DNA from: Selaginella moellendorffii
Taxonomy: Eukaryota > Plantae > Lycopodiophyta
Reading direction: 5' to 3'
Assembly: GCF_000143415.4 (NCBI RefSeq)
Contig: NW_003314400.1
Span: forward strand, 1-64,000
DNA: 64,000 nt
Shown: piece by piece, positions 35,289-60,340 of the stretch
How positions within the stretch are numbered: the stretch's first letter is position 1
How the letters are laid out: the number at the start of each line of letters is the position of its first letter
Made by a program: the position numbers and the translations under genes
The notes under the pieces: generated by a model
Told to the model about the DNA's origin: nothing
The model's input: only the letters and a program-made list of their open reading frames with translations
Database searches by the model: none

Positions 35289-36947
35289 ACTTCCTTCCAC
35301 ACATTCACCAAAAACCTCTATAGCAAGTATTGAAAATAATTACTACTTTTTTTGCCACCACTCAAATAATGCTTAGTAGTGGTGTTTGTCCACCACTTCC
35401 AACCATTTCCTATCTTGTAATTTAAATTTGGTGCTTTGTTTGGTGGCTATTTCTAAAAAATTGTTATAATTGTAGTCATTGCAATTCAAAAAATAGGAAT
35501 CTTCTTGATTTTACTATGTTTAGTTTGTTATTAATACACTTGCATCAAGTTCACCTTATATAATGGTTTATTTAACATGTGTTAAGTAAAAATAAATGGT
35601 GTTAGACTTTAATTTTTTTTTAGCCTGAAGCTTGAATAGTACGTTTTCTATGAGTATCAATCAATATGTGAGTTGGAAATCTTACTTTGCTAGAAATCTT
35701 TCATTTTGATACATTTAATTTTATTTCTACTCGAAGATCCTTATATTGGTTCATGAAGGCACTTGAAAACCATACCTTCTTACCCCTACCTATTTTTATT
35801 ATTAGAATCTAAAGGAATCATGTTTTAGAGAAAGTTGTAAAGGAATGTTACTAAGCTTCTATGGCTCAAGAGAAAGAATAAAATGGGACAACCAATAGTT
35901 AATTTATACTTATTTTCAATAGGTAAAGATGTGATGCTAACCTAAAGAAGTGGTGGAAAATTTTTTTCTCCAAAAAAGATATGAATTCATTGTGAAAAAG
36001 CCATTTCCTTTTTCACAATGTATCTTTGTAATTAAATGTTTGGTGTCACAAATTTTTGCACAAATTCAAGTTGCTCATTTTGCTATAGCTGATGGAGCTC
36101 AAATGGTATTGGTAGATAATTATGGCAAGCCCCTTCAAATAAAAAATACTTCTATTGAAAACTCTTTTATGAGAAGAATTTGCCAAATTTGCTTTTTAGT
36201 TATAAAAGTTTATAAATAATGAACATAAAATTAATCTAAATGCATGTGAAATATTTTATTTTTGCTAGCTTAGAAAAACCAATTCTAGTGCTTAATAAAT
36301 AAATATGCAAAATTTATTAAGCAATGGAATTGGCTTTTATAAGCTAGCAGAGATGACTAGAGAAGCTTTATCATGATTTGAGTATATATTGAATGACTTC
36401 TTCTTCACAAAATTTTGTATCTATTATACTAAATAAAAAATCAATTAGGATGAGATGACCAAATTTCTTGGCATAACTCAATTATTGGTATTTGTAGCCC
36501 ATAACATCAACTAAGAAGCCTTGTCCTTTAACAAAGTTCAAGCTTGAAGTTTGGTAGAATTAGAATAAGTTGCTTCATCAAAGAAATAGTGTGGCTTATT
36601 AGCTTAATAAAGTAACTACAGCATAATCACCTTTTAGTAATGCTTGACAACTATGCAAATATGTATAAAACTTCTCAAAACCCCAAATTGTTGCTAAACA
36701 CTACTACTCTATTCTAGAGTAGTTCACTTCCACTGGTTTTAAAGTACAGATGTATGCAATGCAATGGTACTGACCAGGCATACTCAGGATTTTTTGCATT
36801 AATACACCACCAAGATCAATATCAAAAACATTCACACACAAAATGAAAGGTTAAGTATAGTCATGATATACCAAAATTGGGGGAGTTATCAACAATTATT
36901 AATACCCACTTTTAATCCACAGACTGTAAGTGACTAAATTTTCCATT

Positions 36948-36971
36948 AAGCTTTATTTCGTTAAAGTGGGA
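36948..36971 (+). repeat. Left TIR
   Basis: AAGCTTTATTTCGTTAAAGTGGGA. Confidence 0.92.
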
Positions 36972-37607
36972 TTTATTCAGTAAAATGGGACTAGGTACAA
37001 ATTTTCAAGTATTTAAAAATGACGTGAAATTATATGTTTTTTGTCCAGGGGCTAGACATATCTGGGGCATGGTGACTAGCGCGGTGACCTTATGTCCAGA
37101 CTGTGTCCATCTAGTTGTATAATAAATCTCATTGTTAAGGTGAACAAGCTGAATCTGAAGCTAAAGAAGAGCGATGGCATGCGCGCACACACTATTTGTT
37201 TGTTCATTGAGCGTGTGGTGAGCTTTCCAAGATGAACATCATTCCTATTAGCCAGACATATAGCTTAATGGTGAGAACATTTAGATATTATTCAATGTTA
37301 TCTTTTTCTAACAAATCTAATTGTGAAGGTGTAGCAAGAGGCATTGCTAGTCTGGAGAAGTCATTTAACTCATTTGACCCTTAGTGTATTTTCATGAAAC
37401 TAAATAACATTCATATTATTAAGAAATTTCTCTAGTACCTTTTTTTAACGACATAGAGGCTTGCATTTCTTTCAAAGGTGATTTAGTAAAAGGCCTGAGG
37501 GCACATGCCATTCTATTTCTCAGACCGGTATTAAGATATACTAGTGCAAAGGGAAAAAGGTATTTGGTGATCAAGTAAATGGCATGAGGGCACACGCCAT
37601 TATAAGC

Positions 37608-37865
37608 CTAAGCGCTAGTGGACACCTCCTTTTTGGTACTCTCAGCGGTACTCTCATCCTTCTCCGGGTCAGTTGTTTTGCTTTGGATTGTTGTCTCTGA
37701 CGTTACTGGGGCGTTCTCGATAGTTGTTAATGTTGCCGTTTGTTCAGAAAAATGATCACCTGGAGTATAGTACGGGGAGTTTGGAAGACTTATATATTCT
37801 ACATCTTCACCTATCTCCTTCTTCGTCTCCTTTTCTGCCTCACTTACAGATTTTGTGCTTGCCAT
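37608..37865 (-). CDS. Possible small acidic Ser/Thr-rich protein (85 aa) inside the transposon
   Basis: ATG-initiated MASTKSVSEAEKE... ORF, higher GC than its flanks, TTTTATAA about 40 bp upstream. No recognisable domain. Confidence 0.35.
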   Translation of the reverse strand: MASTKSVSEAEKETKKEIGEDVEYISLPNSPYYTPGDHFSEQTATLTTIENAPVTSETTIQSKTTDPEKDESTAESTKKEVSTSA

Positions 37866-38578
37866 GAGAACGCTCTTCACCCTAAAATATGGAGTTCGTT
37901 GTGTTATAAAAGGAAACCAACACACACGCTACAAGGGAATGATGGTACATAAAGCACGTAAGCCCACAATATGGGTTTATGTGCCATTAATATGGGCCAC
38001 ACGCCATATTATTAGATTTATGCACGTGTGATTGGTAAATGCATATGTCACATCATCTTTGTTTTACCTCACACACTATATCAGGCCTAATGAACCATAT
38101 CACATGTGCGCACATGCTATATATATGGAGAAGTATTATGCAAGGATAGAAAAATTTAATGCATGATTGTGGAGAGCAATGGCATGAAGCCACATGCTAA
38201 ATAACATTTTAGAGAAAGAATTAAAATAAAAACATGCAAACAGTACTGAGTGGACCAAGACTTAGAAGTGCACAATTGAATGAGGTATTTCTAATAAATA
38301 TTTCACTCACCTCATATAGGAATGGCTACCACTCTCAAATGGCGTATCACCTCATGCCATCACCTCGCAATTTGTTATAACAATCCGATGAATTCATATT
38401 CGGCTTGTTCACCTTAAACTTTAAGTAAGATTTGCTAGAACAACTAAGAATTTATACTTGTTATTTGTATCATCTCACCTAGGAATGGCGTAAGGCCACA
38501 TGCCATCACGCCTCCTCTGATTCAGATTCGGATTGTTCACCTTGAAATAAAATACATTAGAAACTTAGTAAAGGAATA

Positions 38579-41500
38579 TTAATGAATCTCACCTTGAACC
38601 CGGGTTATGAATGCTCTTGCTGCATCTCTTGCATGGTCTGGCAAGGTGATGGTGGCACTCTGCTTCCGCATCCAACCATGCACAACATTATCCACCGATA
38701 TGCTCATGCTAGGATCCCTTGGATTTAGCACCCATCTCTTTTCTAGGCAATCCTTCGTATATCCGGAACTTGGCTTGAACCACTCCACAGTTACATTGAA
38801 GGAGTTAGTTTCCGCGTCCTCCTCTGCATCAGTGATGCAGCGCCCCACCCATATCATTTGTTTTTTATTACTGGGTCTGACAAGCACGACCATTCCTTTG
38901 CAGACCTGTACTGGATTGAATGCTGAATCCGGCTTCTTGTTCCTCGGCCCACAATAGTGATCCTCAACATCGTTATCAATCACTGCATTTCCAGAGGACA
39001 TTGTTCCGCTACTATCTGGTGCTCTGGGTTCTGGCCAAAAGGACTCTTCCAATTCTTCATATACAACCGGCCCATTTTGGATAGCAGATATAATCTTCTC
39101 CCAGTATTCGAGCAAAGGCTTGCACCTCTGAAAATAAGATTCTCCACCAAACACCAACCCCCTCTTCCAGAAGGCAATATGCTGTCTAATCCCGGCCACT
39201 ATACTTTCCTGGTCTTTGAGTCCATCCGGGTGCATCGGCCGTGGGGAACCTTGAGGAATCATAGGTTCCCCAGTTATGGGATCTCTCTTGAAGAGTTCAA
39301 TGCCGTCCACTGGCAGCCACACTGTGTCCCATTCTCTCATCTTGTACCTCATCACTGGAGCACCGTCACGCATGCTGAAATGAAACTGAAGAGGCTTGGA
39401 GTGGCCAATCAGCATTTCGGATCCGTCCTTGATGTAGCCTCTTACAAACCCCTTAAAGTCTGGAACCTCTGTCAGAAGTGCAGCTTCAACAATGCCTTTG
39501 ATGCAATTTTGGAATTCATCGTAGAGTTGTGGGAGGGTGAGGACATTGGATCGCCGGAGGGACTCTGCCAGGTGACTGAACATGGCATCGACGTCTTCAT
39601 GAGTGTGCCCAACCATGAGAAAGCCAAGTGTAACCGTTTCAAATATGCCTTTGGCAACAAGCATCGCCAAGTACGCGAAGACGTACATGTTTTTGTTCTC
39701 ACTGCCAGCATTGTCTGTTTGGAGTAGAAGATGGGGTGGAAGGCCACATCGGCCGCAAGAACTTCCTTGAGATTCTGCTTCGTTTGGATGAGGCTGTGCA
39801 TTCACCGGGCGACCAGCCTCGTCGGAATGGCATGAGGCCTCACGTGATAACCCTACAATCTGACGGCCAACATATTCACTGGGATGGCATGGGGCCCCAC
39901 GCGATACTGCAAGCCTTTGCTCCTCCTCCAACTAAACCCTGTATGGGGTTCGATCGACAAGGGCCTTATGCAAGGGTTGGCCGTTCAGCTCAGTCTGCGC
40001 ACTTTGCAGAGACCTTAAGTGTTTTGCTAGGGACGCAATCATCATGTTTGCACCCCCGCCACCCCATAGAGGTACAAAGAAGTTCCCATAGTTCTGGGCA
40101 CCATGCCCATGAGCGATTATGCCAAACAGAGACACAGGCAGCTGCATGGATGAAGAGATTGCCTTGGGGGCAGGATTGAGTTGAGGTAAGCACGTCTTTT
40201 TCTGGTCCATTTTGTCGTGGATGATGCAGAGGTAAGAGTCAGGTCTCTCCATGGAGAGAATCCTGTTATGATAATATGCAGTCCTGCAGCTTCTCTGCTC
40301 GATGTTGTGGTCGAGCCGCCTTCTAACCAACATCTCTCGCTCTTGAGCGCTACAAGAATTCTTCGACAAAGCCATTTTGATAGCAGTGCACTCGTCACAC
40401 TTTGAAAAGCTGGAGTACTTTCTTATACTCACATCCCTGAACCTGTTGCTCCACAATCTACTAAATCTAGATTGGCTCAGCTTCTTGTAGCCATTACTCT
40501 GGAGTTCCCGATTCACATCTTCCAATATGGCCCCCTTGGTATACATGGAAGGGAGAACTCGTTGGGTGTCTCGTGTTCCATCTTCCAAGAGGCGGGTTTT
40601 ATGTGGTTGCTGCTCGCTACATGTCTCGACAAACCTCTTGAAGATTGCCTCTCCATATACAACATGACCCCTGGTTTTGTGCGTACCGTCGTTCCCATGG
40701 ACTGCCTGTTGAACCCTTTGTTCCTCGAACTCAGTTTTGATTCTGTAGAATGTGGTTCGAGGGACTCCATAAATGATTCTCCATGCCTTCATGCAGACCA
40801 AACCCCTCTGGAAGACCATGCCCCCCACCTGATGTTCTGAAGCATCAACAGATGACCGTAATGCCTCATACACAAAATTGCGAGCTGCCTTCCAGGACAA
40901 TGTCTTGTATCTTGCTCTCTCCTCTTCAATAGCATCCCAATCAGCATGTTGACAGCACCTCCTCTTGCAACAAGCAACTGTCGAGACCATTCGAACCTCC
41001 ATCGCCATTTTCTGCCTTTTCGGTTCGTTGCTCAGATCCCTTTGGCTGCGCTTTAGGAAGGTGTACTTTCTTTTCCCATGAAGAGATGTTCTGTCATCAG
41101 TTGTAGTGGTGTTTGATTGTGAATCCTTCACATTCTCAAACACTAAGTGCCTCAATTTCCACCGCACAATGCTTCCAATAGTCAGACTGTTTTCTTCTGT
41201 GTCAACAACCTCTAAAATCGCAACTCCAATATCATCCCAGCCCAATTCTTGATTAGCAACCGCATCTCTTGGATCGACAACTGTGGCTAAGCCCTCAGCT
41301 ACCACCTCCCCCTCGGGGTTGTTTAGAAACACCTTCGCCTGAATCCATGTAACACGGTTCTTAAGATCCACGGAGGGAACATGCGTCGCACTTGCGCTGT
41401 CCCCAACATCTGCTTTCTTCTAAAGATTTTTCAAGGCAACAACAACATTTACCCCGACGACCATCTCTCCTCGTTCAATAGCGACCACATTCCCATCGAA

Positions 41501-41647
41501 GACAGTCTCTACTGATACAGCAGCATTGCCTTCCCTAAGCCTTTGACAGTGTATAACAAAGTTCCGATCCATAGACACAAGGGTCCCTTTTGCAACTCTC
41601 TTCCCACCATTCAAAATGTAAACCTTTTCCCCAACCCTGAAGGCCAT
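38579..41647 (-). pseudogene. Sola-like DDE transposase, ~1020 aa, with two in-frame TAG stops (41420-41422, 39932-39934)
   Basis: ORFs 41420-41647, 39932-41371 and 38579-39931 share one frame. Motifs FSKCDEC, IIHDKMDQ, LQTDNAGSENKN and FLMVGHTHEDVDAMFS. Confidence 0.88.
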
Positions 41648-41799
41648 TCTGAAAGTGCAGAAAAGAAGTTAAGACCATACAAAAAATGATTAGAGAATGG
41701 CCTAAATCATAACATACCAAACAACCTCAATAGCATGAGGCCACATGCCATTATTCAAACATGCTATTGACACCCACGTGAAATTTCGCATTCACAAAA

Positions 41800-42018
41800 T
41801 TGGCATGAGGCCTCATGCCATTAGTGGTACCACTAATGGCATGAGGCCTCACGCTATCTTTGGCCCCTGCTAGCCTGTTACTATATTCCTTTTGCTTTGC
41901 TGCAATTGTATATATTTTTGTGTGCGTGACTAGTCACCCATACAAAAATATATACAGTTCAAAAGGAATATGGCAATAGGCTAGCAGGGGCCAAAGATGG
42001 CATGAGGCCTCATGCCAT
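41800..42018. repeat. Compound inverted repeats upstream of the transposase
   Basis: Hairpin 41800-41857 centred on GGTACC and hairpin 41836-42018 centred on GTGACTAGTCAC. Each arm ends in the 22-bp palindrome. Confidence 0.9.
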
Positions 42019-43139
42019 CTTGATATACACACAGCTGCAGGTAAGTAAAAACATACATGACAATACACTAGCCATGAAATTGCAAGGGCCCAAGATGGCA
42101 TGTGGCCTCATGCCATTTCTAAATGTGGTCCTAAGCCATTCCATGGTGAACATACCAGGAAGCACAAGTGCCGAATATCAAGAGGAAGCGGTAGCCACAC
42201 CAAAGACAGTGCCGCTCGCAACACCGCAACTACTCGTAGCGCCGCTCGCAACACCGCAACTGCTCGTAGCGCCGCTCGCACAAACTGCCACTCGCATAAA
42301 CTGCCGCTCGCAATGGCGCTCGCAATGCCGCAACCGCTCGTAGACGCATAAACCACAGCTCACAACGCCGCTTACACAAGCAGCGCTCACTGCGCTTAGC
42401 GAAACCAAGAACACGGCGCACAAAAATGATAGACCTAGGAATGAGTTCGAGAATTCAAAAATAACACACGCTTGAACGTCACATCAAATCCTCTGACAAA
42501 CCAGATCTTATGACTCCTCTGACAAATTTCAAACTGAGTAGCTTCTAGACTTTGCTGTCAGAGGTTGAACTTTGTCACATCATGTCCTTGCCTCGATCCA
42601 GCTATGCCATGTCAGTGATTCGAACTTTGCCATGCCATGTCAGCGATCTGTGCCAAGATTATTCGCCGTGTAAAGGAATAATTATGCTGTGTGTGTACGT
42701 CCATTTATGGCAATATAAGGCCACACGCCATTCAAAGAATAATGCTAGTCGAGCATTTTTTGGTGCATTTTTGGGTTCAAAATTGCATGAGCCCATACGC
42801 TATAAAGTTTACCTGTACCAAAAATAGAAACAGCTTTATTTACTTGGGAATTTAAGTGGTTGAGGCATTTTTAAACTTACAAACACATGCCCTACTTACA
42901 TTCCTTTGGTTGCTTAAAATTCAAAAATATTATAAACCTTTCTTTTTGCATTTTCAATGTTTTCAATTATGGTTTTTGATTTTCGCAGGACCAGCCTAGT
43001 AATCTATTTGCATCCCGTCATGTTTATAGCTAGCTTTCGTTTGTCCCCTTCGCTAGCCTGAGATACATCTGCTCGGCATCTGCCTCTTACAGCATTTGCC
43101 CAGAAAGGGCATCTTTCTTCATGCAGCATTTGCCACATG

Positions 43140-43165
43140 TTTAGGGTTTAGGGTTTAGGGTTTAG
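43140..43165 (+). repeat. Interstitial plant telomere repeat (TTTAGGG)3+
   Basis: tttagggtttagggtttagggtttag. Confidence 0.85.
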
Positions 43166-44706
43166 CAATTCAGTAGCTTGATAAACATGCAAATACAGAA
43201 CTTGATGCAAAATCCTTTGATATGTCACAATGCCCCTAGGACCATAAACACATTTCATTTCATAACTCCTTACGTAGATCTTGGTGAAACCAGAGTTAGT
43301 GAAGTTAGTTTCTTGTGATCCCGCATCTGATTGTGATGTCCCTTTGCAGTGTCGATGGAAAGGTCAATGCACACCAAACTGTAAAATCTTGGAGCAAAAT
43401 AACGGTCGGATCTATGGCAAATGCCCCTGAAACATTGTAAGGCTCGTGTGGTCTTATGTGGTGTCCGATCGAGATGCTTCTTTGCAGGGTCATCAAGAAA
43501 GACATTGTATACCATTCTGTAAAATCTAGTTGCGATCTAACAGTTGGATCTCCAGAAAACTCAAAAAAATCTCACGCGTGTCAGAATATCCTAGGAATAT
43601 ACTCCTATGTGACCCTGAAAATGGCATGCGGCCCCACGCCATTCAAGAGATAACGCCAGATGACGCCGAGAATTTTTTGGTGCATTTTTTGGGTTCAAAA
43701 TTGCATGAGCCCACACGCTATAAAGTTTATCTTTGCCAAATAGAGAAAAGTTTATCTGTGTCATGTGAGGTAGTTACAGTTTTTTGTGCTCGGCATCTGC
43801 CTCTTGCAGCATTTGCACTGAAAGGGAATTTTTCTCCATTCAGCATTTGGCCCTGAAAATGGCATGCGCCCACACGCTATTCAAGGAATAACGCCACATG
43901 ACGCCTGGATTTTTGGGTTTAAAATGTTTAGGGTTTTTTGGGTTTTTTCAAAATATTTTGGGTCCAATGTTTTTTGGGTTTCTTTGGTTCAAAATTGCAT
44001 GAGCCCACACGCTATAATATTGATTTGAGAGAAAAATAGAAACAGATAGAATTTCTTTATTTAGCTGAACATCTGCCATTTTTGGAAATACAAGATGCTT
44101 TGGAATATCCAATCATGCATGGTATAAATATAGCGAGGGTATTAAATGATATCCCAATCATGATCTTTCTTTTGGATTTCGCGTGCATGCAGTCCGAGGA
44201 ATGATGACGTTGCGGATTTCTTTTGGATTTTGTGTGCTTGCATGCGCGCGGCAATCCAGAAATTAATGGTGGCGCCCAAGTCCGAGGAATGATGACGTGG
44301 CGGGATTACCAACCGTTGTGACATTTCGCGCGTGTGAGGTTAGGTTTTGCATTTTGCTTCATACTCGCGCTCGCATCGCGCTCCCACTCGCGATCACGCT
44401 CACATTCGTGCTCATCTACCTTCTCTACAGGTTTCTCGTGTGCATCGGCGTCCACTCGCGCTTGCATCACACTCGCGCTCGCATCGCGCTCGTGTGCATC
44501 GGCGTCCACTTCAAGACACACCCAATTTGTAACTTCGCCGCCAACTCCGCCACCCACACGCAGCCCACTTGGCGTCCCGGGAGATTTCAGCGCCACTCTC
44601 CAACTGTTAAGTGGCAGAGTAGCCTTGCTGCTACGATCCGCTGCACACACAGTGCACATTTGCCAGTGAGTCCGGCCTCGATTGTCACGCCTCCATTCGG
44701 CTTCAA

Positions 44707-47700
44707 ATGGTAAGTCTTTTAGGCCAAGTAGAAAATGGCATGAGGCCACATGCCATTCAGTAGCAACATTGGCATGCATCAATTGGGCTCTCAAGTGTAG
44801 TCCGGTTACAGATGGCGTGTAGCCTCACGCCATCTTAGGATGCAGCCTCAAGACATCTAATGCAGTGGTGAATGGCGTGTGGCCTCACGTTATTTCCAGC
44901 TGCTAGCTTTTCATCTGTCAGCTCTAATTGTTGTGCATTTCTGAACAGGCGAGGAATTGCGTTCTTCTTCCAGCCACTGTCAATGTGGATGCAGAGAAGG
45001 GGGAGGAGCTCACCAGTTGGACTTTCGGGATGGAAGGCGAGGATCTGAGGCTGTACAACACAGATGGTGGGAGAAAAGAATGCATGGGGATCCTCATCCA
45101 AGTGACAGACACTCCATGCAGTTCCATGCAAGAATATGGACTGGCACTTGTGGTAGAGACAGCGTCCGCCTTCAAGATCCACCCTGCACATCCTAGCGGC
45201 TTCCTGGAGGGGGGCAGCGGCTATGAGGAATTCCTAGAGGGAGCTAGGGAGAGGTTGTCCAGGAGGCCCACAATTTCAAAGACGCTGCGGGTTTATGAAG
45301 ATCACATGGAATCCACGGACCTCACCTACGGCGATGTTCAAAAACTATATTCTAACATTGAGCCGTTGAGAGTGCCTCCAGTTCGCGAAGCGAAGAGGAA
45401 GGGGGTCGATCTGGAAACTACCCCGAAGCAGAAAAGGGTGGTCAAGCTCAAGCCGACGTCCGACTCTCTTGCTCCAAAAAAGAAGCTACTCGGTGATGCC
45501 ATTGCCTCGGGTTCGAACACTACACCCACCAAAAAGAAGAGCCGCAAAGAGCAAAAAGAGCAAGAAGAGGCAGCAAAAATCATCGCAGATAATAGTACTT
45601 GTTACTATTCCAACAAAGTATATACAATCGACGTGAGCCGTATCGACATCCAAAGCAAATACAACCACAGGCTAGTATCTGATGAGTGGGTGGAGAAACT
45701 GAAGCAGAAGATGCTGGCAAGTCCAGTAACACCCGACATCGCAGACGTGATCCCCTACTACCGAACAATGAAGGGCGAGACGAGGTTTCCAGACTTGATC
45801 AATAAGAAGGTGTTGGATGATCAGAACATCTGGTTCTATGCCGTCTCCGGGCAGCATTCTAGCTTGGCAATGCAAGAGATAGTTGTGGATATTATGGTGG
45901 GCGAGGAGGTGAAGAAAGTCTTCAAGACAAGAGTTGTACGCCTGATAAAAGGCAACTCGCCCCTCTGATCTATCATATCCATCTCCCACGCGCAGAATGT
46001 CAAGCAAGAAACGTGCTACAAATCGGGTCTGCACGAGACATTGGCACGAACATGGAAGCTCTGGGTTCAACTGAAGAAGCCACAAAAACCAGGACAAGGA
46101 CGTGCACTAGCAACTAGCGCCTGGCAGGTAAGCCTCGTTGCATGTGGCATAGCATGTGGCCTCACGCCATTTCCATTGTAGGAATTCTCGAGTCTTCTCT
46201 CGAAAACACTGGGGGTCAATGACACACTCAGCATCCATAACATTCTACTCGCGACAAAAGTTGTTTTTGACAAATGGGTAGATGTGCTGAGGAGGTACCA
46301 TGACGGGGAGTTGCTAAACTCAATGGGTGTGGAGGACGGCCGGAAGCCTAATGATTTGAAGCTCAACGCCTTGCGTTTCTCGCGGTCTCTAGATGACGAC
46401 GACCTTCTGACAGTGGCTAATGCTCTTCTACGTGGTGAGGTAGTCTTCAACAAGACCAAAATGACTCCCGGCCATATTGTGACATACGAGGACTTGTGCA
46501 CGACTCTGAGAGCTCGTGCGCTATTGAAAGATTGGATCTTCGAGCAAGTGGCCGTGGAGAGGGTGAGCATCGACACCACGCAAGAGATGATGGAAGAGCT
46601 GGAGTTGTCAAATGAAGACATCGACAACTACGTGAAGGGGGCCCCCAAGTTCATCGATCTGCTGCGGGATGCCACGAAAAGTAAAGTTGAGAAGTTGAAT
46701 CAGTATCCAAATTTCATTAAGAGGGATGTCGACCGCCGGCTTCAGAAACAGCTCGACCCCGCAGCAGAGGCCTATCGAGAACCTTACCGGGTATACGTGA
46801 ATTCGGATGAGGATCAAAGGTGGAGGAGCATCGTTTCCCGCGGAGATGAGCAGGTCAAGAACATCTTTTGTGTTATGGACTTCACAAACGAGGAGATCAC
46901 TCATGCAGACGAAGTCAGCTCCATCATTGACTTAATGGTGGGACTTGCGGAGGTGGAATCTTCAGTCCACTATATGATCTACGACTCCGAATCCTATCAC
47001 AAGTTCTGGAAGGCCTTGAACGAGGTGAAGGCTCGGTTGAAAGGCAAGGAGATGCAGGAGATCCATGGGATAATGGCTAAGAAGAAGATACCGACGAATG
47101 TCCGCATCTTCACACTCGCCCTTGTTATTGGTCCTGCAGCAGAGTGGGACTGGAGTGACTTCCCAGCTTCGTTTGACAAGGCCGATCGAATTGATCTGAG
47201 GGAGGTCAATTTACCCGTGCCTGAGGAACTGAAGACGGCTATGGAGCTTTCGAATCCAGAGAAAGCTCCAGGTGCAGCATGGGAAATGCTCAGTTGGGTC
47301 TTCAACGCAATAGCACCTGCTTCCAACTCCAAGGGCAAATGCGTTGTCGAGTACAACTGCGGCGGACTATTCTTTCGAGCCGCACTACTCAAGGGTGTCC
47401 CGTATGTTGCGGTGACAAACTCCATTGAAGAGGTGACTTCAATGAAACATATAGTTACAGTTGCCAAAGAAAAACAGTATCTTCTCTGCGAACCTGGTGA
47501 GTACGCACTTTAAGTTTAAATGCTATCTCACAAGCTCTGTATGCAGGAGCGTGGCCACCCCCAGATGCTGAAACGGCATTAACAGCTACTGTTGGGCCGA
47601 GCTCACAACCTGCACAAGGTAAGGTCACGTGAGGCCTCACGCCATTTTGATTATAAATCGTTGTGAATATTCAGACACGAGGACTGAAAAGCGCACTGGT

Positions 47701-50238
47701 GGCGCGTCGAAGAAGGACAAACAGACAAGCAATAGGAAAAAAGGAGGTACAAATTATATTTGCAATGGCATGTGGTCTCATGCCATTCCTTGCAGGAGAC
47801 ACTTCTTCAAAGGCAAAACAGGCAAGCACCAGCCAAGCTCAAACTGACAGTGGTCATAAAAAGCGAAAGCACGTTGGACAGTCGTCGGGATCAGAGGCGT
47901 TTGATTCAAAAAGGAAGAAGGGCAACGAAAAGATGATAGGTAATGCCTCGCGGTCACCACCTCCTAACTCAGATTCCTATGGCGGACTCCCCTTCCCCAA
48001 TCTCAATGGAGAGGTACAATGGATGAGGGATGCTTTTCAAGTCAAGGCCACGTTTTTCTCATCTCGTCGTCTTCGAAGGGTGCAAGAACGTGCAAAAACC
48101 ATGTTAAGACAGTCGGGTGAGGATACGATCCTAGGTCACGCACTAAAACAGGCTATGGATGTCTTGTATTTTGAGATGGAGACTCAGCCAGATGATTTTC
48201 CCAAGATGGTCCTGGAAGAACAAGCCATCCAGCCTGAGCAGCCTATGGAAGAAATGCAGGAGGGGGATGAGGAGCCAGAGAAAGATAATGAGCAGGAAGA
48301 GCAGAAGGACGAAGAGGAGGACAAAGAAGAGGAGGACGAAGAGGACTTGGATGGTCCTCACAATGGTGACGATCACAATAACGACGACGACGATGATGAC
48401 GACGATGGCCAGCCTGAGGTGGCCAAAGAGCAGCGAAGGAAGGTCATACAAGACAAACCATCAGGTAAATAATAGTACATCCATTCCTAACCTTTTACCA
48501 TTTCTAACATTGTCCATGTAGGTTGCAAAGCAAATGGTAAGTAGAGATTATTCAGTTGAATTAAGATACAAACTCTAGCTTTTAGTGTCGAGGAAGGATA
48601 GTGCCAAGCAAGGGTCGAAACGTATGTCCAATCCTTCAGAATCAGCAGTGCGCCCAAGTGATATCGGTCCTAGTTCCTCAATAGCAGTTGATGGTAAATA
48701 CAGTATAGTCGATTCAATGTGCTAATGAGTTTGTTTTTAGTAGCCAGTAGGGAGGATACCATCTCAATCGAAGGGAGATATTTGGACATGCATATGGATC
48801 CGCCAGTGGACTCTACTTGCCTGCAAGAGTCATTAGAGCTGGTGGAGGCTACTATTCATATCAACGCCAAGCAAGCTGACCACGCTCCACTTGATGCTGC
48901 CCATACCACTGAGTCAATCTTGTCCACGTATCCAACTGACAGTGACCAGGTGCCATTGGACCTGCATGAGGCCGCCCCAGCCGCCGAGCCGGTCGTATCC
49001 TCATTTCCAACAGACTCAACGTGTGCCCAATCGTCTGACTACGCGCCGTTGGAACCTCCCTACACCGCCCCTGCTGCCTGTTCGGTCATGTCCACTTTGC
49101 CAACGGAGGCACCAGCTGAAATGGCGTGTGATCACACGCCATCGGAACCACCCCATGCCACTGTTGAGCCAGTTGTACCAGAGTCTATAGCTGAAATGGC
49201 ATGTGCCCACACGCCATCGGATGTGATTGACCCCACATTGCAGAGGAGAGTATTTCCGCCCTTCACGTTTCCTCGACCAAAACCCTCTGAACGACCATCG
49301 GGAACACCATTCGCTAATATTGTAGATGGTAAAATTGACTTGTACCATTTTTTATGCTGACGCATTTCATTTCAGAGTCACGGCGAAGGTACTGTATCGT
49401 TTTTGATATGAACGGTGTCCTTTTCTCCCATGAGCGTGGCTCGTCCTCGAATGTCACTGCACCCTCCAAAGCCTGCGGTCGCAAGTTGGTCAAAAGAGAC
49501 AGATTCACATTAATCACACGGGAGAAACTGCGGGATCTAATAATGACCATGCGACACTTAAAACAGAGGGCCGGGTTCAATTTGCAATTGGGAGTTTGGA
49601 CATCCATGATGCACCACAATGCATTAACGTTGCTACAGATGATGCACGATCAGACGCGAGTAATATTACCATTTGACTTTCTCCTAACGCAGGAGGATTG
49701 CTTGACTATGGTCCATGTGAGGGGTAGCAAGCCCATCTTCGTCAAGCCAGAGGCTGTAGTGATGAACCGGACTGCTAGGTCAAGTGAAATCCTCATCATC
49801 GATGACTCGCCGATTAAAACTGCAGCGAACACGCACACATATGCAATGCACCCCATCTCTTGCAATATGGAAACTAGGGAGAAGAAACCGTATGTTCTGG
49901 GGGACCTTGCAGAACGGCTTGGAGCGATGGTGATAGAGAACCGGCCAGTCCAGGAGGTGGCTGCAGAAATCAACCAAATGGCAAATGGAACGGTATATCA
50001 GAAGTCATTTGATCGGACAGACACCAGTCATCATTTATGGCATGTATATTGTCTAGCCAAGCACTATCCGCATCTCCATAATCTGCTCAACCGGATGGGT
50101 TCTTCGACCACTGAACATGAGCGTGGACGTATTAGAGAAGAGATGGCATTACTATTGGGTTTAAATCTTGATAGTGTGGAGAGTGATGAAATTCCAAGAT
50201 TATTGTATAAGCGTTGGAGGCAAAAAATAACAGTCTGA
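44707..50238 (+). CDS. 10-exon ~1627-aa cargo protein: ParB-like, degenerate DNA MTase-like, acidic/disordered linker, FCP1/SCP-like HAD phosphatase. One internal TGA at 45966.
   Basis: Exons 44707-44709, 44949-46127, 46182-47496, 47547-47618, 47675-47746, 47796-48464, 48522-48536, 48586-48693, 48741-49328 and 49376-50238. All introns are GT-AG (239 nt, then 47-57 nt), phases are consistent, and the total is 4884 nt. Confidence 0.8.
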
Positions 50239-50656
50239 GATGGCATGTATTTATTTAAAAATGTAACTTATTATGGCATGGGGTTCCATGCCATTGTATT
50301 AATATTAAAAGACAATTCTTTGAGAGGATTTGCATTATACTAGAAGTGTTACAGCATGTTATTGGAAGTCTACGAAGTTGTTTTATTAATAAGGGGAAAG
50401 TAAAGATTGAATGGGGACTTGGGCTCCACCTAGACTCGGAGCAACTGAGCCAATATTAAAAGGATGGAAAGAAATTGGATGACGATGACAAGGAGAAGAG
50501 AGAGGTGAAGCAGTGGCAGGGGGAGGAGAAGTGATTGAGTAGACATTTCCTTGTTTAAAATAAAATGGCATGTGCCTCAATGCAGTTGAATTTTGTTATA
50601 TTTATATACTATATAAAGGTTTGGAAACCTTATTTTACAAGTGGGATAATGACAAT

Positions 50657-50680
50657 TCCCACTTTAACGAAATAGAGCTT
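50657..50680 (-). repeat. Right TIR
   Basis: TCCCACTTTAACGAAATAGAGCTT. Confidence 0.92.
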
Positions 50681-51768
50681 CATTGTACTTTAGTCATTTA
50701 ACCACACTTCCGGCGACTTGTAGGAGTCTTATGCACAACCTCCATAAATCTTATTCCAGACTTGGGGACTTGCTAGCCTCATGAATGGCATCTATGCCAC
50801 TCAGCTTTTGTATTTGGTCCAAGTGCTCCACATGTTCAATCCCATAACCGACACCCAAAGGTACCATTGGCATATCAACTTGTAATGCTAAGGCTTAGTA
50901 GTCCAAGACCACCTACATCACAATCTTGTCTTTTAAAGACTAGGCTATCTATTTATGAGTAGCCATCCCTTATCAACACTTTAACACCCTTAGAATGCTC
51001 GGAGACATAAGTAACACCCTTCTCTAATGTCCCTTCTTCCATCCCTACCAAGTCCCTCTCTATCCATGGCTATGCTTGCTAATACCGTCATAGGATCAAA
51101 GCCCAAAGGCCTGACTACAAAGTCCCATTGACCTCTAGGGCTTCCTTACCATGTGATCATATCCTTGGTCACTATACTAAAGGACTACTCCTCTTCCTTT
51201 CCATAGTTCGGGACTTTGGGATAACATTTCAAAACACCATGGCCTTACATTAGCCTTGTGGGTACTCCCACCTTCTATCCTTAGGTGCCCTAGCCATGTG
51301 GCTAGAGCAAGGTCTTGATGAGCCACACAAAGTATCTAAGTGGGTAATCCACCCACACTTGGATTGGGAGCATCAATTGTTTGATCTCTTAGGGGAGCTA
51401 AAGTCAGCTCTTGAACACTTCACCAAGCTACCCCACTTGTTTATCCATATTCACTTTAATTTTGGACTCCTCAGTGGTTTTATCATCACTCAATATGTGG
51501 GTATACCCTTCTTTGGTCACACTAGTTTTTCCTGGCCAAATTAGCTCCACTAGAGTCCTCCTCTTACTATACTTTTGGAGCTCACCAAACCCCCCAGCTG
51601 GGAGACAAATGCTTTGGGCTTTCACCCTCAGATTCAGACTCAGACTCAAACTTGGACTCAGACTTGGTCTTGGTCTCAAACTTGGTCTCGGTCTCGGTCT
51701 CGGTCTTAGTCTCGGTTTCGATCTCGGTCTCAGTCTTGGTTTTAGTCTTAACATCAACTTCACCTCAA

Positions 51769-55899: not shown

Positions 55900-57565
55900 T
55901 TATACTGCACAATCCCAAATACCATTCGAAACGCCTCTGCTTTACATGCATCTGTAGCACGCTCAAGCCATCAGTGAGGATCCTGGCAGGATTCAAATGC
56001 ATAAATAGCAGGATCCTGAGCAAGGTTGCTCAAGTAGAGCCAAAGCAGTCGGCCATACTTGAGCATCCACTCATTACTAACCACCTCCTCAAAACAATTC
56101 CCCTGTGTAGATGTAGCCAGCAGAGTGTGCTGTTTTCCCCGATATCTCCCTTAAAGAAGGCAATCAAAGGAGACGGAAGAAAAAACCCAGGGACCAGATT
56201 CCGACTCTGCAAAGAAGGATCACACCACTCGGGTTCTAAGAAATTGGTGACCCTGCATGTAGTGTCTATGGACAGAGTTAAACATTTTCCACTTAACACT
56301 CGTGTAGATCTTCAAAGTGGGATGTACACGTTTTTTTCTCGTCCATCTATGGAAGGTAACAGCGACCGGGCTTCATCGAAGACAAACAGCAGCTTCAACG
56401 GTTGGTCTGTCATCTCCATACCAACTCCCAAAGCCAGGGACCTCAAGAATATAACTCTGGAAGACTTCAGTGGCTTTAGTCTCCCATGTCGTCCATAGTT
56501 CAACTGAGTACTAGCCTGTATCTTCTTGAGAAACTTAAGTTTCCATTCAAGTTTTTTTATCCGATTCTCCACTCCCGGTCAAAATCCCTTTCCACCATCT
56601 ACCGTCATCATGTTTGAAAACACTTGCAGCGTCCACGACTCCTCTTTCCCTAGTCCTCCACCCAGCTCCTCAATGCATGCAATTCAGTAAGCCAGACAGT
56701 AGGTCATGCATGCGAGATGGCCTGCGTAATCTCCATTTCCCAGTGCCTGCCTTGCACGGCCGAGGAAAGCATTTCTAAAATATGAGGGCTGAGGATAACA
56801 GGAGCCAGAACCCAGCGACAAGTAAATGACCCAAACCTGTTTCCGATGTAACTCTCGAACCACCCTCGACTTACCCCAGCTGCTGGACTGGAAGAGACCA
56901 ACGATACGTGAAAAATCAGTCTCCTTCTTGATCTTGTTCAGGGCGTCGTAAAACGAGTCTACTCCACTGCCCTGATATTCCATGTCAAATGCTCGACCTG
57001 TAGCAGCAGCAAACATAAACATTCATGCAAACTGACGCACTTACTTGCCATCGTTAACTCTATGCCATGTTGTGGACTTGTCCTTGTACTGCTACTGCTC
57101 CTCCGGTGTCAGCTTGTACCAGCAAGCTCTATAGATTTCATCAAGCCATTCCTCGCCGTTCAGCTTCTTGTGGATACACTCCCAAGATTTGAAAAGAAGC
57201 GCTGGGTACTTCTCCAACACCATTCTCACTTTTGATTCCCGCGCCTCGTTGTCTGCTTGTTGCAGCGCCATTTCAAGTACATACTGTGGGCCGATGCCTT
57301 TGTGTTTCTCTTGCTGCTCTGGCGACAACTTGTCCCAACTCTCAAGCAGCAGAACCAAATACATCAGCTTCCTGTCAGAATTGAAACCTTCAAAAATATC
57401 GAACAGGTTCTCCGGGCTTTGAGGATATCTCATCTCCACCGATCGCATCCGCTCTTGTGCAGATAGCAGCAGCTCGTATGCCTCGTCGCTCTCTTCTCGA
57501 ATCCTCTTTCGGGCTTCTTCCGAATGCTCCTGATCCTCCCGCTGCCTTTTGCCTCTGTCGGCCAT
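55900..57565 (-). pseudogene. P-loop NTPase pseudogene, copy B
   Basis: QSSSWGKSR, LLFVFDEA and IDTTCRVTNF. Stops at 57092 and 56684. Confidence 0.65.
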
Positions 57566-57609
57566 AGTCAGGGCTAGGGCTTGTAATCGTGGGTCGACTC
57601 ATGTATTCC

Positions 57610-58300
57610 AGGTGTGGAAGCTGAGAGAGTTCAGGAGCATCCCTTGCCGCAGCCTGGTGTCGTGGATAAGTCGCACAGGATTTGCAGCAGGAAAAGTTTT
57701 CAGGGAAGACATTTCATCGATGAGATGCTCGGCTTCTTGCAGTCTCCGACACCGTGCGAGGAGATCGATCGTACAGATATAGTGATCTGGAGAGGCTGAA
57801 ATTATGCCCTGGAAATTCTGGTGGCCGTTCCTGCGTGGCTACATGTTGCCAGAAGGTTGAGAAAAGTGATTTGGTTTGGGAGAATTCCCTCGAGCTTCAT
57901 CGCATGGAAGATCTCTAGCGCTGCTTCCTCCGATTCAACGTGGGCAGTGAGCATCGCAGTCCAGGAGATCACGTCGCGGTCGGGCATGGAATCAAGCACG
58001 GCTCTCGTGTCTAGGGAATTGCAATCTTCTTCGACGCCACAGCAACCAAGACTCGTCCGCGCTCCAGGCTGGGGATCGCCGCACAGGCATCGATTGCCAG
58101 AGTGAAGGAAACCTCCTCGACCAAGACTCCCTCCAGATCCATGCGCACAAAGATCACGAGGGATTCTGGCGCGAACCGACTGACCGGCCCCCCCAGGAGA
58201 CGGCATCCTTGCGATCACGAGCAGCCTCTTCAGTCCCACTGCTCTCCACCTTTACAATTGAAATGCTAGCCCACACAGACTGGTCTATGTAAGAAAAATT
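57610..58300 (-). pseudogene. PPR pseudogene fragment, copy B
   Basis: DSMPDRDVISWTAML and LEGILPNQITFLNLLATCSHAG. Confidence 0.85.
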
Positions 58301-59249
58301 GAAGAGCATAAGAAAAAGATAAAGAGTGTAACCAGCTTTTAGCTTTTTGTGGTATTTTTGTAAATTTTTGTAACTTCACTTGTAATGTATGCTAAAATAC
58401 ATCTGTATGTTAACCAACATCACTTGTAATGTATGAGGTATTCCATCAATTCCAGGATCATCCTTTAACAATGCCAAGCCAGGCAAGAGCATTGACAAGC
58501 TCATGAGGCAAATATTTTTTCCTGCGCTTCTTTCTTGTCAGCATCATTTTCCTCCTCATTATCTTTGTCAATTTAGTAGCATTTGTAAAAGTAGTTATAG
58601 TAAAATAACATAATTTTAGAAAAGATAATGAATTTTGTTTTTGGTTTACTTAAGCAAACCTGATATGCCTAGAATATATTTGGATATTCTAGAATATTAT
58701 ACCATTTAAGGGTTGTTATTTATTTTTTATAATTAAACATGTTTATAATTTATAAATTTTCCTAAACACTTTTTAATATATTCTTTTTTATTCTACCATC
58801 TAAGGTTGATATGCAATAAGATTAATCTTGTGTTTATAAATTATATACATGTTTATAATTATAAGTTTTCATTTGATCAATAAATAAGAATAACACTACT
58901 ATTAAGAAAACCAAACATTACTCTTAATTACTTTTATATTTCAATATTTTAAATTTTGTCAATTTCTTTGATTAAAATTTCCTTTATAATACTTATAATT
59001 AAGTACACTAACTTGCATTAAGTTAACCTAAACTTGTAAACTTTAACTCAATTTTAGACCAGCCTTCGAGAGGTTTCTTTCTTCCTACGATCTGCTGGGC
59101 AATCCCACCGGGTGAAAGAAATTCACAAGATTATTAGCAGCCACAATAGGTCAATGTTTTCCTTGCGAATCTCATGTGGGGACATGGTCTAGATTGCCTT
59201 CAATCACATCTGCCGACCCAATGTCTTCTGCTCTTGGCGATTGCCCAGA

Positions 59250-60340
59250 ACGAAGCAATGCCCAAGAGAGATGTTACGACACTACGCAGGTGATGGGAAC
59301 TTGGATCAAGCCCAGGCACTGTTTGATCGAATGCCGAGAAGAATGTAGTGGCATGGACTGTGATGGTTACCGCATTTACCCATAAAGGGGATCTGGATAG
59401 TTCGAAAGAGTTGTTTGATAAGATGCATGAGAGAAATCCGGTTTCTTGAGGTGCTCTGATATCGGCTTATGCAGTGCACAACCGGCTTGAAGAAGTGAAG
59501 CGTTTTTTTTTATGCGATGGAGAAATCAAACATTCACGTCTACACTGTGATGATCACTGCGTATGCCAAAGCAGGGGAAATTGAAAATACGGAGAGGATG
59601 TTTGCTCTCATGCCTGAGAAGGACGTAATCGCTCAAACTACAATGCTGCAAGCGTTTTCTCACAATGGTCTTGTTGAGAAGGCAAGCAAGATCTTTGATG
59701 TAATCCTTGACAAGTATGAAATGGCTTGGAACGATATGATCAATTGCATATGCTCAAAAAGGGCAAGCATTTTGTGCAAAGCAAGTGTTTGATTCCACGC
59801 CCGCAAAGAAACAAAACATCGTGACTTAGAACTCAATGCTCTCGCTGTTTAATCTCCGAGCTCTAGAGCTGCTGAAAACCATGCAGCTCGAAAGGATCAA
59901 ACCAAACGAGATAACTTTCATCACAGCACTGGGTGCTGACGCCGGCAAGCTTGAAACTGGACAAGCGTTCCACGCCAAGATCATCGATCAAGGACCAATG
60001 CATCCAGGTCTTGCTGGTGAATATGTATGGGAAATACCGTAGACTGTCACAGTCTTCAACCAAACCCAAGCGAGCCTCCGCAACACTATTTGCTGGATTG
60101 TGATGATCATGGCTTTTGAAGACAACCACCAGTTTCTGGTCGTGCGCTTCATAGGCTGATATCAGAGCACCCCAAAAAACCAGATTTCTCTCCTGTCAAG
60201 CAACTCTATTTCGCAATCAAAGTCCCCTTTCTGGGTACCATCACAGTCCATGCCACTACATTCTTCTCGGGCATTTGATCAAACAGTTCCTGGGTTTGAT
60301 CCAAGTTCCCATCAGCTGCATAGTGTCGCATCATCACGAC
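59250..60340 (+). pseudogene. PPR pseudogene plus inverted PPR fragment (60137-60340), copy B
   Basis: Paralogue of 4740-5825 with additional stops. Confidence 0.85.

What the first reader, a model, noticed from the sequence alone, without database searches (positions are those of the whole stretch)
36948..50680. Giant Sola-like transposon pairing a ParB/MTase-like/CTD-phosphatase-like cargo protein with ~30 private palindromic sites: candidate self-recognition system
Seen: exact ends (24-bp TIRs, CATT TSD, empty site restorable), two divergent genes, and a 22-bp palindrome spread from one end of the element to the other that I did not see outside it. Established: bacterial ParB loads at palindromic parS sites, and Arabidopsis VANDAL transposons encode VANC proteins that bind short motifs dispersed through their own non-coding DNA to defeat silencing. 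Inference: the cargo protein, or the transposase N-terminal domains, binds these palindromes and delivers a chromatin- or transcription-modifying activity to its own element. That would be a cis-site plus effector module in a superfamily usually described as carrying only a transposase. I cannot establish novelty without a search.
Basis: partly seen in the sequence, partly recalled or inferred. Interest (0 to 1): 0.95.

Follow-up and report, generated by a model that had tools for sequence, protein, structure and literature searches.

The report
Sola1 transposon with ParB-like gene, palindromes
This is a real but decayed 13.7-kb cut-and-paste transposon of a non-seed plant that carries, besides its transposase, a large second gene and 29 copies of a private palindrome; liverwort relatives share the design and similar ones were reported in algae in 2025, so it is a new variant of a known kind whose binding protein is still unproven.

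Summary
The element spans 36948-50680 and has 24-bp inverted ends with one mismatch. It is flanked by a CATT duplication and holds two divergent genes. It carries 29 copies of a 22-bp palindrome (ATGGCRTG-6 nt-CAYGCCAT); none lies in the other 50 kb.

It is a C>T-decayed copy of a very high-copy family. Two stop codons are private C>T changes. The ends and the DUF7869 transposase fit Sola1.

The second gene splices into about 1,650 codons. Its ParB-like, methylase-like and phosphatase-like labels have only weak support here: Pfam, PDB and structure prediction gave nothing.

New here: two Riccia (liverwort) Sola1 families carry a homologous divergent gene and their own palindromes. These sit in the transposase linker and in the same intron of the second gene. 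Terminal repeats are conserved between these plants, while the palindromes differ by family.

The sites are therefore most likely docking sites for an element-encoded protein. I favour the ParB-like accessory protein (0.45) over the transposase (0.3); neither is shown.

The idea is not new. A 2025 Ectocarpus paper describes a Sola1 element with a divergent ParB-methylase gene. A 2025 red-alga paper describes ParB-type accessory genes next to inverted-repeat arrays.

This scan has already found the same family many times on other DNA of this genome.

The parts
36944..36947 (.). Left target-site duplication CATT
   Evidence: the same 4 bases lie at 50681-50684.
36948..36971 (+). Left terminal inverted repeat (24 bp, one C>T change relative to the right end and to L001)
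   Evidence: (I6). The core TATTTCGTTAAAGTGGGA resembles the Riccia element ends and the insect Sola1 TIR quoted in PMC3845634.
36972..38578 (.). Left subterminal region downstream of the transposase stop, with 7 palindromes (37174, 37490, 37579, 38099, 38179, 38339, 38485)
38579..41647 (-). Sola1-type DDE transposase gene (about 930-1000 codons). Candidate ATG at 41647-41645. It has N-terminal Cys-rich and HTH-like parts. The catalytic part hits Pfam DUF7869 (about 39332-39742).
   Evidence: PF25273, E 1.2e-39. (homologues in Riccia, Calypogeia, Exaiptasia). (tblastn to L002-L005). (L001 ORF starts at the same ATG).
39932..39934 (-). Private nonsense mutation in the transposase (TAG here, CAG in copy L001)
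39818..39937 (-). Non-conserved transposase linker holding 2 palindromes (39827, 39884). It is in-frame as coding in L001 and is also removable as a 120-nt GT..AG intron.
   Evidence: The same linker position holds palindromes in L008, L004, L009 and L005.
41648..44706 (.). Intergenic region between the divergent genes. It holds 10 palindromes, 30-nt tandem repeats (42208-42341) and a telomere-type repeat (TTTAGGG)n at about 43142-43166.
44707..50238 (+). Accessory ('cargo') gene. It has about 10 exons and about 1,650 codons, joined by 47-113-nt GT..AG introns that keep the frame.
   Evidence: one path from ATG 44707 to the stop at 50236-50238 with 9 introns and a single read-through. Phases checked by hand.
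45966..45968 (+). Private nonsense mutation in the accessory gene (TGA here; the majority of family copies have C at 45966)
   Evidence: table 3.
45726..46538 (+). Conserved N-terminal module of the accessory protein. It comprises a ParB-like core with the motif SGQHSS (45846-45863) and an HTH-like stretch after the intron.
   Evidence: Riccia L008 ORF vs window, E 1.7e-12. (alignment, shared motif). (language-model features: DUF3723 0.91, ParB_N 0.85). No Pfam or PDB support.
46128..46181 (+). 54-nt phase-0 intron filled by a palindrome (46149). The homologous intron in Riccia L009 and L008 holds their own palindromes.
46840..47496 (+). DNA-methyltransferase-like region (beta-class order). 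Motif IV is degenerate (DFTN, 46878-46889). A motif-I-like stretch NCGG lies at about 47343-47390.
   Evidence: all top feature hits N6_N4_Mtase, score 0.82, a lead only. (Riccia homologue ORF, PF01555, E 0.03, motif-I region). (its only phage hit is a DNA methyltransferase, E 0.3). No direct Pfam hit.
47619..47795 (+). Two further small palindrome-bearing segments (47624, 47765) flanked by GT..AG. They are introns of 56 and 49 nt in one phase-consistent model.
   Evidence: with the hand phase check. One search gives an alternative model that reads the second as coding.
49114..49221 (+). 75-bp tandem duplication in a Pro-rich coding linker. Each copy carries a palindrome (49121, 49196) read in frame.
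   Evidence: (D7).
49376..50238 (+). C-terminal HAD/NIF-like domain. Motif I is D-M-N-G-V (49405-49419), so the second Asp is replaced by Asn. Motif IV is DD at 49801-49806.
   Evidence: features 0.95, 207 shared, NIF/FCP1 clusters. (weak homologues P0040 and P0041 hit PF03031). (motifs invariant). No direct Pfam or PDB hit.
50239..50656 (.). Right subterminal region with 2 palindromes (50273, 50565)
50657..50680 (-). Right terminal inverted repeat
   Evidence: I6.
50681..50684 (.). Right target-site duplication CATT

Best explanation
What it is: a decayed, full-length copy of a high-copy Sola1-superfamily cut-and-paste transposon. It encodes (i) a DDE transposase and (ii) a divergently transcribed accessory protein of about 1,650 aa. 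The accessory protein has a conserved ParB-like/HTH-like N-terminal module, a methyltransferase-like region with a degenerate catalytic motif, and a HAD/NIF-like C-terminus.

The palindromes: the 29 family-specific 22-26-bp palindromes are cis sites for an element-encoded dimeric DNA-binding protein. The most likely binder is the accessory protein's ParB-like/HTH module.

How it would work: the sites are seeded along the whole element wherever sequence is free to vary (subterminal DNA, the intergenic promoter region, introns, coding linkers). The protein can therefore recognise and coat its own element and bring its C-terminal domains to it.

Shown: the anatomy; the privacy of the sites; conservation of the three-part design in liverworts; family-specific change of the palindrome against conserved ends.

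Inferred: which protein binds, and that binding changes chromatin, methylation or transcription.
For: 1. Site privacy: 29 of 29 sites lie inside the element, and chance expectation is about 0.

2. Site placement: sites avoid conserved coding sequence. Inside genes they sit in small introns or low-complexity linkers.

3. Riccia families: family A (L008, L004) and family B (L009) have a divergent upstream gene homologous to the window's N-terminal module (E 1.7e-12). They also have their own palindromes, with 11, 14 and 18 copies against about 0 expected.

4. Homologous intron: the intron of the accessory gene at the same position holds the family's own palindrome in all three families.

5. Ends versus palindromes: the terminal-repeat core is conserved between the window, the Riccia elements and an insect Sola1. 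The palindromes are unrelated between families. This points to a reader other than the end-binding function of the transposase.

6. Literature: ParB-type accessory genes occur with inverted-repeat arrays in Plavaka elements. A ParB-methylase gene lies divergent to the transposase in Ectocarpus Sola1-1. The shared element across transposase superfamilies is therefore the ParB-like gene.

7. Site form: half-sites of 9-13 bp in a perfect dyad are typical of dimeric HTH proteins (established knowledge).
Against: 1. No profile or structure tool confirmed a ParB fold. Pfam, PHROGs, NCBIfam and PDB gave nothing, and AlphaFold on a single sequence failed with pLDDT 32. The ParB arginine of the GxxR/GxHR box is Ser here (SGQHSS).

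2. The Calypogeia locus L005 has 8 own palindromes around a related transposase. It has no detectable accessory gene in 7.7 kb upstream, though its boundaries are unknown.

3. L002 and L003 have 21 and 23 own palindromes upstream of the transposase and no accessory gene in the contig. These contigs stop 4.4-5.6 kb upstream, which is less than the 6.3-kb spacer seen in L008.

4. The transposase has its own Cys-rich and HTH-like N-terminus.

5. There is no RNA evidence that the gene is expressed; all runs laid behaved as DNA.
Confidence: 0.45

Rival explanations
1. The palindromes are binding sites of the Sola1 transposase itself, through its N-terminal zinc-finger/HTH part. They would help transposase loading, end pairing of a very long element, or autoregulation of the transposase promoter. 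The accessory protein would do something else.
For: Arrays are densest directly upstream of the transposase gene in the window (10 sites), L002 (21), L003 (23) and L005 (6). Palindromes lie inside the transposase linker in the window and in L008, L004, L009 and L005. No accessory gene was detectable in L002, L003 or L005. Subterminal repeats that bind transposase or a transposon protein are well known in Ac and En/Spm (established knowledge).
Against: The terminal repeats, which the transposase must recognise, are conserved across lycophyte, liverwort and insect Sola1 and show no similarity to the palindromes. The palindromes differ completely by family. Sites kept deep inside the accessory gene, including a homologous intron, are hard to explain by transposition chemistry. 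L002 and L003 are truncated contigs, so absence of the accessory gene is not shown.
Confidence: 0.3
2. The palindromes are regulatory or structural DNA read by host factors, or act as hairpins. Examples are enhancer or insulator sites for the two divergent promoters, intronic hairpins that affect splicing, or cruciforms. They would not be read by an element-encoded protein.
For: The highest density lies in the divergent promoter region next to telomere-type repeats, which are known plant promoter elements. Several sites sit in tiny introns.
Against: Host-factor sites should be shared between families in one host, yet Riccia families A and B differ. They should also occur outside the element, and none does in 50 kb. 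Sites also lie in untranscribed subterminal DNA and in coding linkers.
Confidence: 0.15
3. The palindromes have no function. They are by-products of a palindrome-generating repair or duplication process, or remnants of a tiny nested mobile unit.
For: Some sites lie in locally duplicated blocks (D6, D9 and D7), so part of the copy number comes from segmental duplication.
Against: There are no direct-repeat flanks. The flanks continue the dyad (AAA...TTT), so these are not insertions with target duplications. Introns that carry them share nothing but the palindrome. Independent families keep arrays of their own sequence at homologous positions.
Confidence: 0.1

Closest known systems
Sola1-1_Ec32 of the brown alga Ectocarpus (Genome Biol 2025, PMC12477816)
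   Same: A giant Sola1 element. [quoted passage not shown] The authors propose that it binds and epigenetically modifies its own transposon.
   Different: The element here is from a land plant. Its protein is about 1,650 aa against 1,104 aa and adds a HAD/NIF-like C-terminus. Its methylase motif IV is degenerate. The text I read does not mention an element-wide palindrome array in the alga. Sequence homology to the algal protein could not be tested.
Plavaka (KDZ) elements of red algae with accessory gene PAG3 (Petroll et al. 2025, bioRxiv 10.1101/2025.02.11.637652)
   Same: An accessory protein with an N-terminal ParB-like domain. Tandem arrays of inverted repeats lie next to the gene in each family. 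The authors make the same self-binding proposal.
   Different: The transposase superfamily is different. The effector domain is a 2OG oxygenase, not methylase-like or phosphatase-like. Their arrays are adjacent to the gene, whereas here the sites are dispersed from end to end, including introns.
Bacterial ParB-parS partition and ParB-methyltransferase fusions of phages and plasmids
   Same: A dimeric reader plus palindromic sites in several copies on the replicon it serves. The domain order is ParB-like followed by a beta-class methylase.
   Different: There is no ParA partner. The CTP/arginine box is not conserved (Ser in place of Arg). There is no profile-level match. The setting is a chromosomal eukaryotic transposon.
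En/Spm TNPA and VANDAL VANC systems of seed plants
   Same: A transposon-encoded non-transposase protein that reads short motifs repeated in its own element. TNPA reads subterminal 12-bp motifs. VANC reads motifs dispersed through non-coding DNA and causes loss of methylation.
   Different: No homology was tested or expected. The motifs here are long perfect dyads. No methylation or expression data are available here.

Membership tests
Sola1 superfamily of DNA transposons | 4-bp target-site duplication, with AWWT preference (Bao et al. 2009 as quoted in PMC3845634) | tested here: met
   There is a 4-bp TSD, CATT. It matches AWWT at 3 of 4 positions. The flank of copy L001 reads AAAG. The length criterion is met; the sequence preference cannot be judged from two sites.
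Sola1 superfamily of DNA transposons | Terminal inverted repeats related to known Sola1 termini | tested here: met
   The window TIR shares TATTT...AAAGTGG with the insect Sola1 TIR printed in PMC3845634. It also shares a core with the ends of Riccia elements that carry a homologous transposase.
Sola1 superfamily of DNA transposons | Sola1-type DDE transposase | tested here: inconclusive
   Pfam DUF7869 hits at E 1e-39, and there are homologues in liverworts and a cnidarian. No reference Sola1 transposase was available to align. No paper in the library links DUF7869 to Sola1.
ParB/Srx (ParB_N) domain proteins | Profile match to PF02195 or a solved ParB | tested here: not met
   There was no Pfam hit at E<=10 for the window pieces and none at E<=1 for the Riccia L008 homologue. 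There was no significant PDB hit with single sequences or a small profile.
ParB/Srx (ParB_N) domain proteins | ParB/Srx fold | tested here: inconclusive
   AlphaFold without an alignment gave pLDDT 32. Language-model features list ParB_N only at rank 35 with score 0.85, and DUF3723 at 0.91.
ParB/Srx (ParB_N) domain proteins | Conserved GxxR / GxHR box | tested here: not met
   The motif is SGQHSS in the window and (R/G)QHSS in Riccia. Gly and His are kept, but Arg is replaced by Ser in all three.
Beta-class N6A/N4C DNA methyltransferases (PF01555) | Catalytic motif IV (D/S/N)PP(Y/F/W) | tested here: not met
   The window has DFTN and Riccia L009 has DLTH at the matching place (read by eye).
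Beta-class N6A/N4C DNA methyltransferases (PF01555) | Profile match including SAM motif I | tested here: inconclusive
   The window has no Pfam hit. The Riccia homologue ORF hits PF01555 at E 0.03 on the motif-I end of the profile. Features score 0.82 with all top hits in this family. The only phage hit is a DNA methyltransferase at E 0.3.
FCP1/SCP (NIF) HAD phosphatases (PF03031) | Motif I DxDx(T/V) with both aspartates | tested here: not met
   Motif I is D-M-N-G-V, so the second Asp is Asn. This is invariant in the three weak homologues, so it is not decay.
FCP1/SCP (NIF) HAD phosphatases (PF03031) | Profile match to NIF | tested here: inconclusive
   The window piece has no Pfam or PDB hit. 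Its only homologues (E about 5e-5) hit PF03031 at E 1e-5. Features score 0.95 with 207 shared.
Bacterial ParABS partition system | ParA ATPase partner and centromere function | tested here: not met
   No ParA-like ORF exists in the element. Function is not testable.
Algal transposon ParB-methylase accessory genes (Ectocarpus Sola1-1_Ec32) | Gene divergent to a Sola1 transposase that encodes a ParB-like plus a methylase-like domain | tested here: inconclusive
   Orientation and superfamily match. The domain calls here are weak.

The most novel reading that the evidence does not exclude
A transposon-encoded reader (ParB-like/HTH accessory protein) and a private palindrome code form an ancient self-recognition system. 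The system would be shared by Sola1 elements of lycophytes and liverworts and, with other transposases, by algal elements. The element could then mark or shield itself from host silencing, using dead-enzyme domains as adaptors.
Probability: 0.35. Interest if true: 0.8.

Novelty: new variant of a known kind. Interest (0 to 1): 0.55.

Why it matters
If an element-encoded protein really reads these sites, this would be a land-plant example of a transposon that tells its own DNA from the host's. Only a few such cases (VANC, TNPA) have been worked out.

Three features make a concrete, testable system for how giant DNA transposons persist or escape silencing. The palindrome changes by family. The terminal repeats stay conserved. 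A site is retained in a homologous intron.

The concept has been in print for algal elements since 2025. The gain here is therefore extension to land plants, a new domain combination, and sharper comparative evidence, not a new kind of system.

Tried and rejected
1. Profile and sequence searches: Pfam, PHROGs, NCBIfam and PDB searches of the accessory-gene pieces gave no usable hits.

2. Representative library: phmmer of the 409-aa middle ORF against 1.84 billion representatives gave two hits. Both are spurious repeat proteins, one RTX and one thrombospondin.

3. Other homologue searches: the word-index search with the ParB-like part found nothing. The metagenome scan found nothing. The palindrome is absent from viral contigs.

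4. Structure: AlphaFold without an alignment failed for both pieces (pLDDT 32-33). I therefore ran no fold search.

5. RNA evidence: every run laid behaved as unspliced DNA. Splicing and expression remain inferred from phase-consistent GT..AG introns.

6. 'Cargo-less relatives show the transposase is the binder': rejected as unproven. The L002 and L003 contigs end 4.4-5.6 kb upstream of the transposase, while the spacer is 6.3 kb in L008. L004 at first looked array-free, but it belongs to the L008 family and has 14 degenerate sites.

7. Palindromes as tiny MITEs: rejected, because the flanks extend the dyad and do not form direct repeats.

8. Introner-like copies: rejected, because the introns share only the palindrome.

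9. The NIF-like homologues P0040 and P0042 lie in compact, gene-dense, non-transposon contigs. They say nothing about transposon context.


Full report
OBSERVATION

The element runs from 36948 to 50680 (13,733 bp). Its two ends are 24-bp inverted repeats with one mismatch, and CATT lies directly outside both ends.

A Logan contig from another sample (L001) carries an internally deleted copy of the same family. That copy ends at exactly the same base but continues into a different flank. The boundary is therefore real and the duplication is not a fixed sequence. L001 also shows that the mismatch in the left repeat is a C>T change private to the window copy.

With one CATT removed, the two flanks form a 10-of-11 inverted repeat. 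This fits a single restored target site (read).

The palindrome ATGGCRTG-N6-CAYGCCAT occurs 25 times at up to 2 mismatches, against 0.06 expected from shuffles. It occurs 29 times at up to 3 mismatches. Every hit is inside the element and none is in the remaining 50.3 kb. Many sites extend to 26-28 bp with AAA/TTT flanks.

STATE OF THIS COPY

Contigs of public runs show that the family is present in very many copies in the host; 25,220 contig pieces were laid in one run. The window copy differs from the majority mostly by having A or T where the majority has G or C, that is, C>T decay.

- The stop that splits the transposase (TAG at 39934-39932) is CAG in L001.
- The stop that ends the first large accessory ORF (TGA at 45966) is CGA in the majority.
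- Other copies carry extra sequence, including a palindrome, near 47954.

The window copy is therefore dead but nearly complete. No splice joints were seen and all runs behaved as DNA, so there is no expression evidence.

TRANSPOSASE AND SUPERFAMILY

The minus-strand gene (38579-41647) hits Pfam DUF7869 at E 1e-39. It has homologues at 30-45% identity in the liverworts Riccia and Calypogeia, in unnamed assemblies, and in a sea anemone.

A paper quoting Bao et al. 2009 gives a 4-bp AWWT duplication as the Sola1 hallmark. It prints an insect Sola1 terminal repeat that shares TATTT...AAAGTGG with the repeat here. The ends of the Riccia elements share the same core. I accept Sola1, although no reference Sola1 transposase could be aligned.

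ACCESSORY GENE

A search over GT..AG introns finds one path from the ATG at 44707 to the stop at 50236-50238. It uses nine introns of 47-113 nt and a single read-through, the known C>T stop. The product is about 1,650 aa.

I checked several junctions by hand, and they keep the frame:
- 46128-46181 (54 nt)
- 47497-47546 (50 nt)
- 47619-47674 (56 nt)
- 47747-47795 (49 nt)
- 49329-49375 (47 nt)

These were read. The 5' end and the 47.5-47.8 kb part remain ambiguous without RNA.

The domain labels are weak here.
- Pfam gives nothing even at E<=10. PHROGs, NCBIfam and PDB give nothing.
- An exhaustive phmmer of the middle ORF against 1.84 billion representatives gives only two spurious repeat-protein hits.
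- Single-sequence AlphaFold fails.

What does support the labels:
- C-terminus: language-model features point to NIF/FCP1 (0.95, 207 shared features).
- Middle: features point to N6_N4 methylases (0.82, a lead only).
- N-terminal ORF: features point to DUF3723 and, far down the list, ParB_N.
- C-terminus again: it has three weak homologues, two of which hit Pfam NIF. All share FDMNGVLFS, a HAD motif I whose second aspartate is asparagine.
- Methylase-like part: it has DFTN where (D/S)PP(Y/F) is expected, and a motif-I-like NCGG near its end.
- Riccia counterpart: it has DLTH and FSGG. Its last ORF hits PF01555 at E 0.03 on the motif-I end of the profile. Its only phage match is a DNA methyltransferase at E 0.3.

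Both enzyme-like domains therefore look non-canonical and may be inactive.

RELATIVES

- L002 and L003 (40% and 35% transposase identity) carry 21 and 23 copies of their own palindromes, CCCTATGGC-N6-GCCATAGGG and TAGCTTGGTC-N4-GACCAAGCTA. All lie upstream of the transposase. No accessory gene is detectable, but these contigs stop 4.4-5.6 kb upstream.
- Riccia L008 has an ORF 6.3 kb upstream, divergent to the transposase, that matches window 45726-46538 at E 1.7e-12.
- Riccia L009 has the same gene, at 48-55% identity to L008.
- The three proteins share the motif A(V/I)S(G/R)QHSS and the stretch that follows.
- L008 has 11 copies, its sister copy L004 has 14, and L009 has 18 copies of their own dyads built on GGGACGCRTCCC. 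These are spread from the accessory gene to beyond the transposase.

In the window and in L008, L004, L009 and L005, palindromes sit in the non-conserved linker inside the transposase gene.

In the window, L009 and L008, the homologous intron of the accessory gene contains the family's own palindrome. This intron lies between the ParB-like core and the HTH-like stretch.

Calypogeia L005 has 8 copies of TCACGAACCATGGTTCGTGA around its transposase. It has no accessory gene in 7.7 kb upstream. Its ends could not be found, and a Ty3 element abuts it.

INTERPRETATION

Three findings argue that the sites are read by an element-encoded sequence-specific protein:
- The sites are private to each family.
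- They are kept at homologous places while their sequence changes.
- They avoid conserved coding sequence but are tolerated in introns and linkers.

Which protein reads them is open. I favour the accessory protein (0.45) for four reasons.
- The terminal repeats, which the transposase must read, are conserved from lycophyte to liverwort to insect, while the palindromes are unrelated between families.
- Sites maintained deep inside the accessory gene fit coating of the whole element better than transposition chemistry.
- The accessory gene is present in every relative where enough flank was available.
- Published cases couple ParB-like accessory genes with inverted-repeat arrays under a different transposase, Plavaka.

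The transposase remains a serious rival (0.3). The arrays concentrate upstream of its gene, and L005, L002 and L003 show arrays without a detectable accessory gene.

Earlier follow-ups of this scan on other copies concluded for the transposase from 'cargo-less' relatives. My data show that this premise is not secure, because those contigs are truncated.

COMPARISON WITH WHAT IS KNOWN

The 2025 Ectocarpus paper describes a 21.5-kb Sola1 family with a divergent 1,104-aa ParB-plus-N4C/N6A-methylase gene. It proposes that such proteins bind and modify their own transposon, citing Iyer et al. 2011 and Petroll et al. 2025. The Bostrychia paper reports ParB-2OG-oxygenase genes with adjacent inverted-repeat arrays.

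No paper in the searchable library joins ParB, transposon, methyltransferase and Selaginella.

The differences here are:
- a land-plant host;
- a fused HAD/NIF-like C-terminus, not detected in the Riccia loci;
- degenerate enzyme motifs;
- element-wide dispersal of the sites, including a conserved intron.

I rate this as a new variant of a known kind. The scan has already reported the same family many times on other DNA of this genome. I did not let that move the score.

Noticed in passing
window 43142-43166 and about 43929; L008 12865-12885: Short telomere-type repeats, (TTTAGGG)n or its complement, lie inside the element in the window's intergenic region and near the end of the Riccia element. 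Some other family copies carry such a repeat inside the first accessory exon (table 5c).
   Followed up: no
window 41397-41638: A 242-nt stretch just after the transposase ATG is absent from copy L001. It encodes a second copy of a small N-terminal domain similar to the one that follows, so the window copy has a duplicated N-terminal module or L001 has lost one.
   Followed up: partly
L001 1-2218: This is a non-autonomous deletion derivative of the family. The sequence jumps from window position 39515 to 37081, removing the catalytic half of the transposase, and keeps the left end.
   Followed up: yes
window 36930-36943 and 50685-50699: The insertion target lies in the middle of an 11-bp inverted repeat (10 of 11 matching). 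The element may prefer palindromic or hairpin-prone targets, or it may have landed in another small repeat.
   Followed up: no
window about 1700-6830 and about 56100-61300: Two stretches about 54.4 kb apart share near-identical segments (seen as paired hits). They are probably two copies of another repeat family flanking the region.
   Followed up: no
L006 2350-2901 and L007 2146-2793: The only sequence homologues of the HAD/NIF-like C-terminus have the same D-x-N motif I. They are small stand-alone genes in very compact, intron-poor, gene-dense eukaryote-like contigs next to MOZ/SAS, ThiF and RFC-like genes. They are not in transposons.
   Followed up: partly
L008 4961-5446, 5856-6344, 7040-7540 (also L004 5280-7381): Three tandem ORFs of about 160 aa encode a repeated unknown domain. 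They fill the spacer between the accessory gene and the transposase in the Riccia family. Nothing similar is in the window.
   Followed up: no
window palindromes, positions 5-6 and 17-18 of each site: The only tolerated variation in the arms is CG versus CA/TG. In the window, 14 of 29 sites keep one CpG, 4 keep two and 11 keep none. The differences listed (40 of 82 shown) include none inside the sites it covers. The mixture may therefore already be in the family consensus, perhaps from methylation-driven decay in the master copy.
   Followed up: partly
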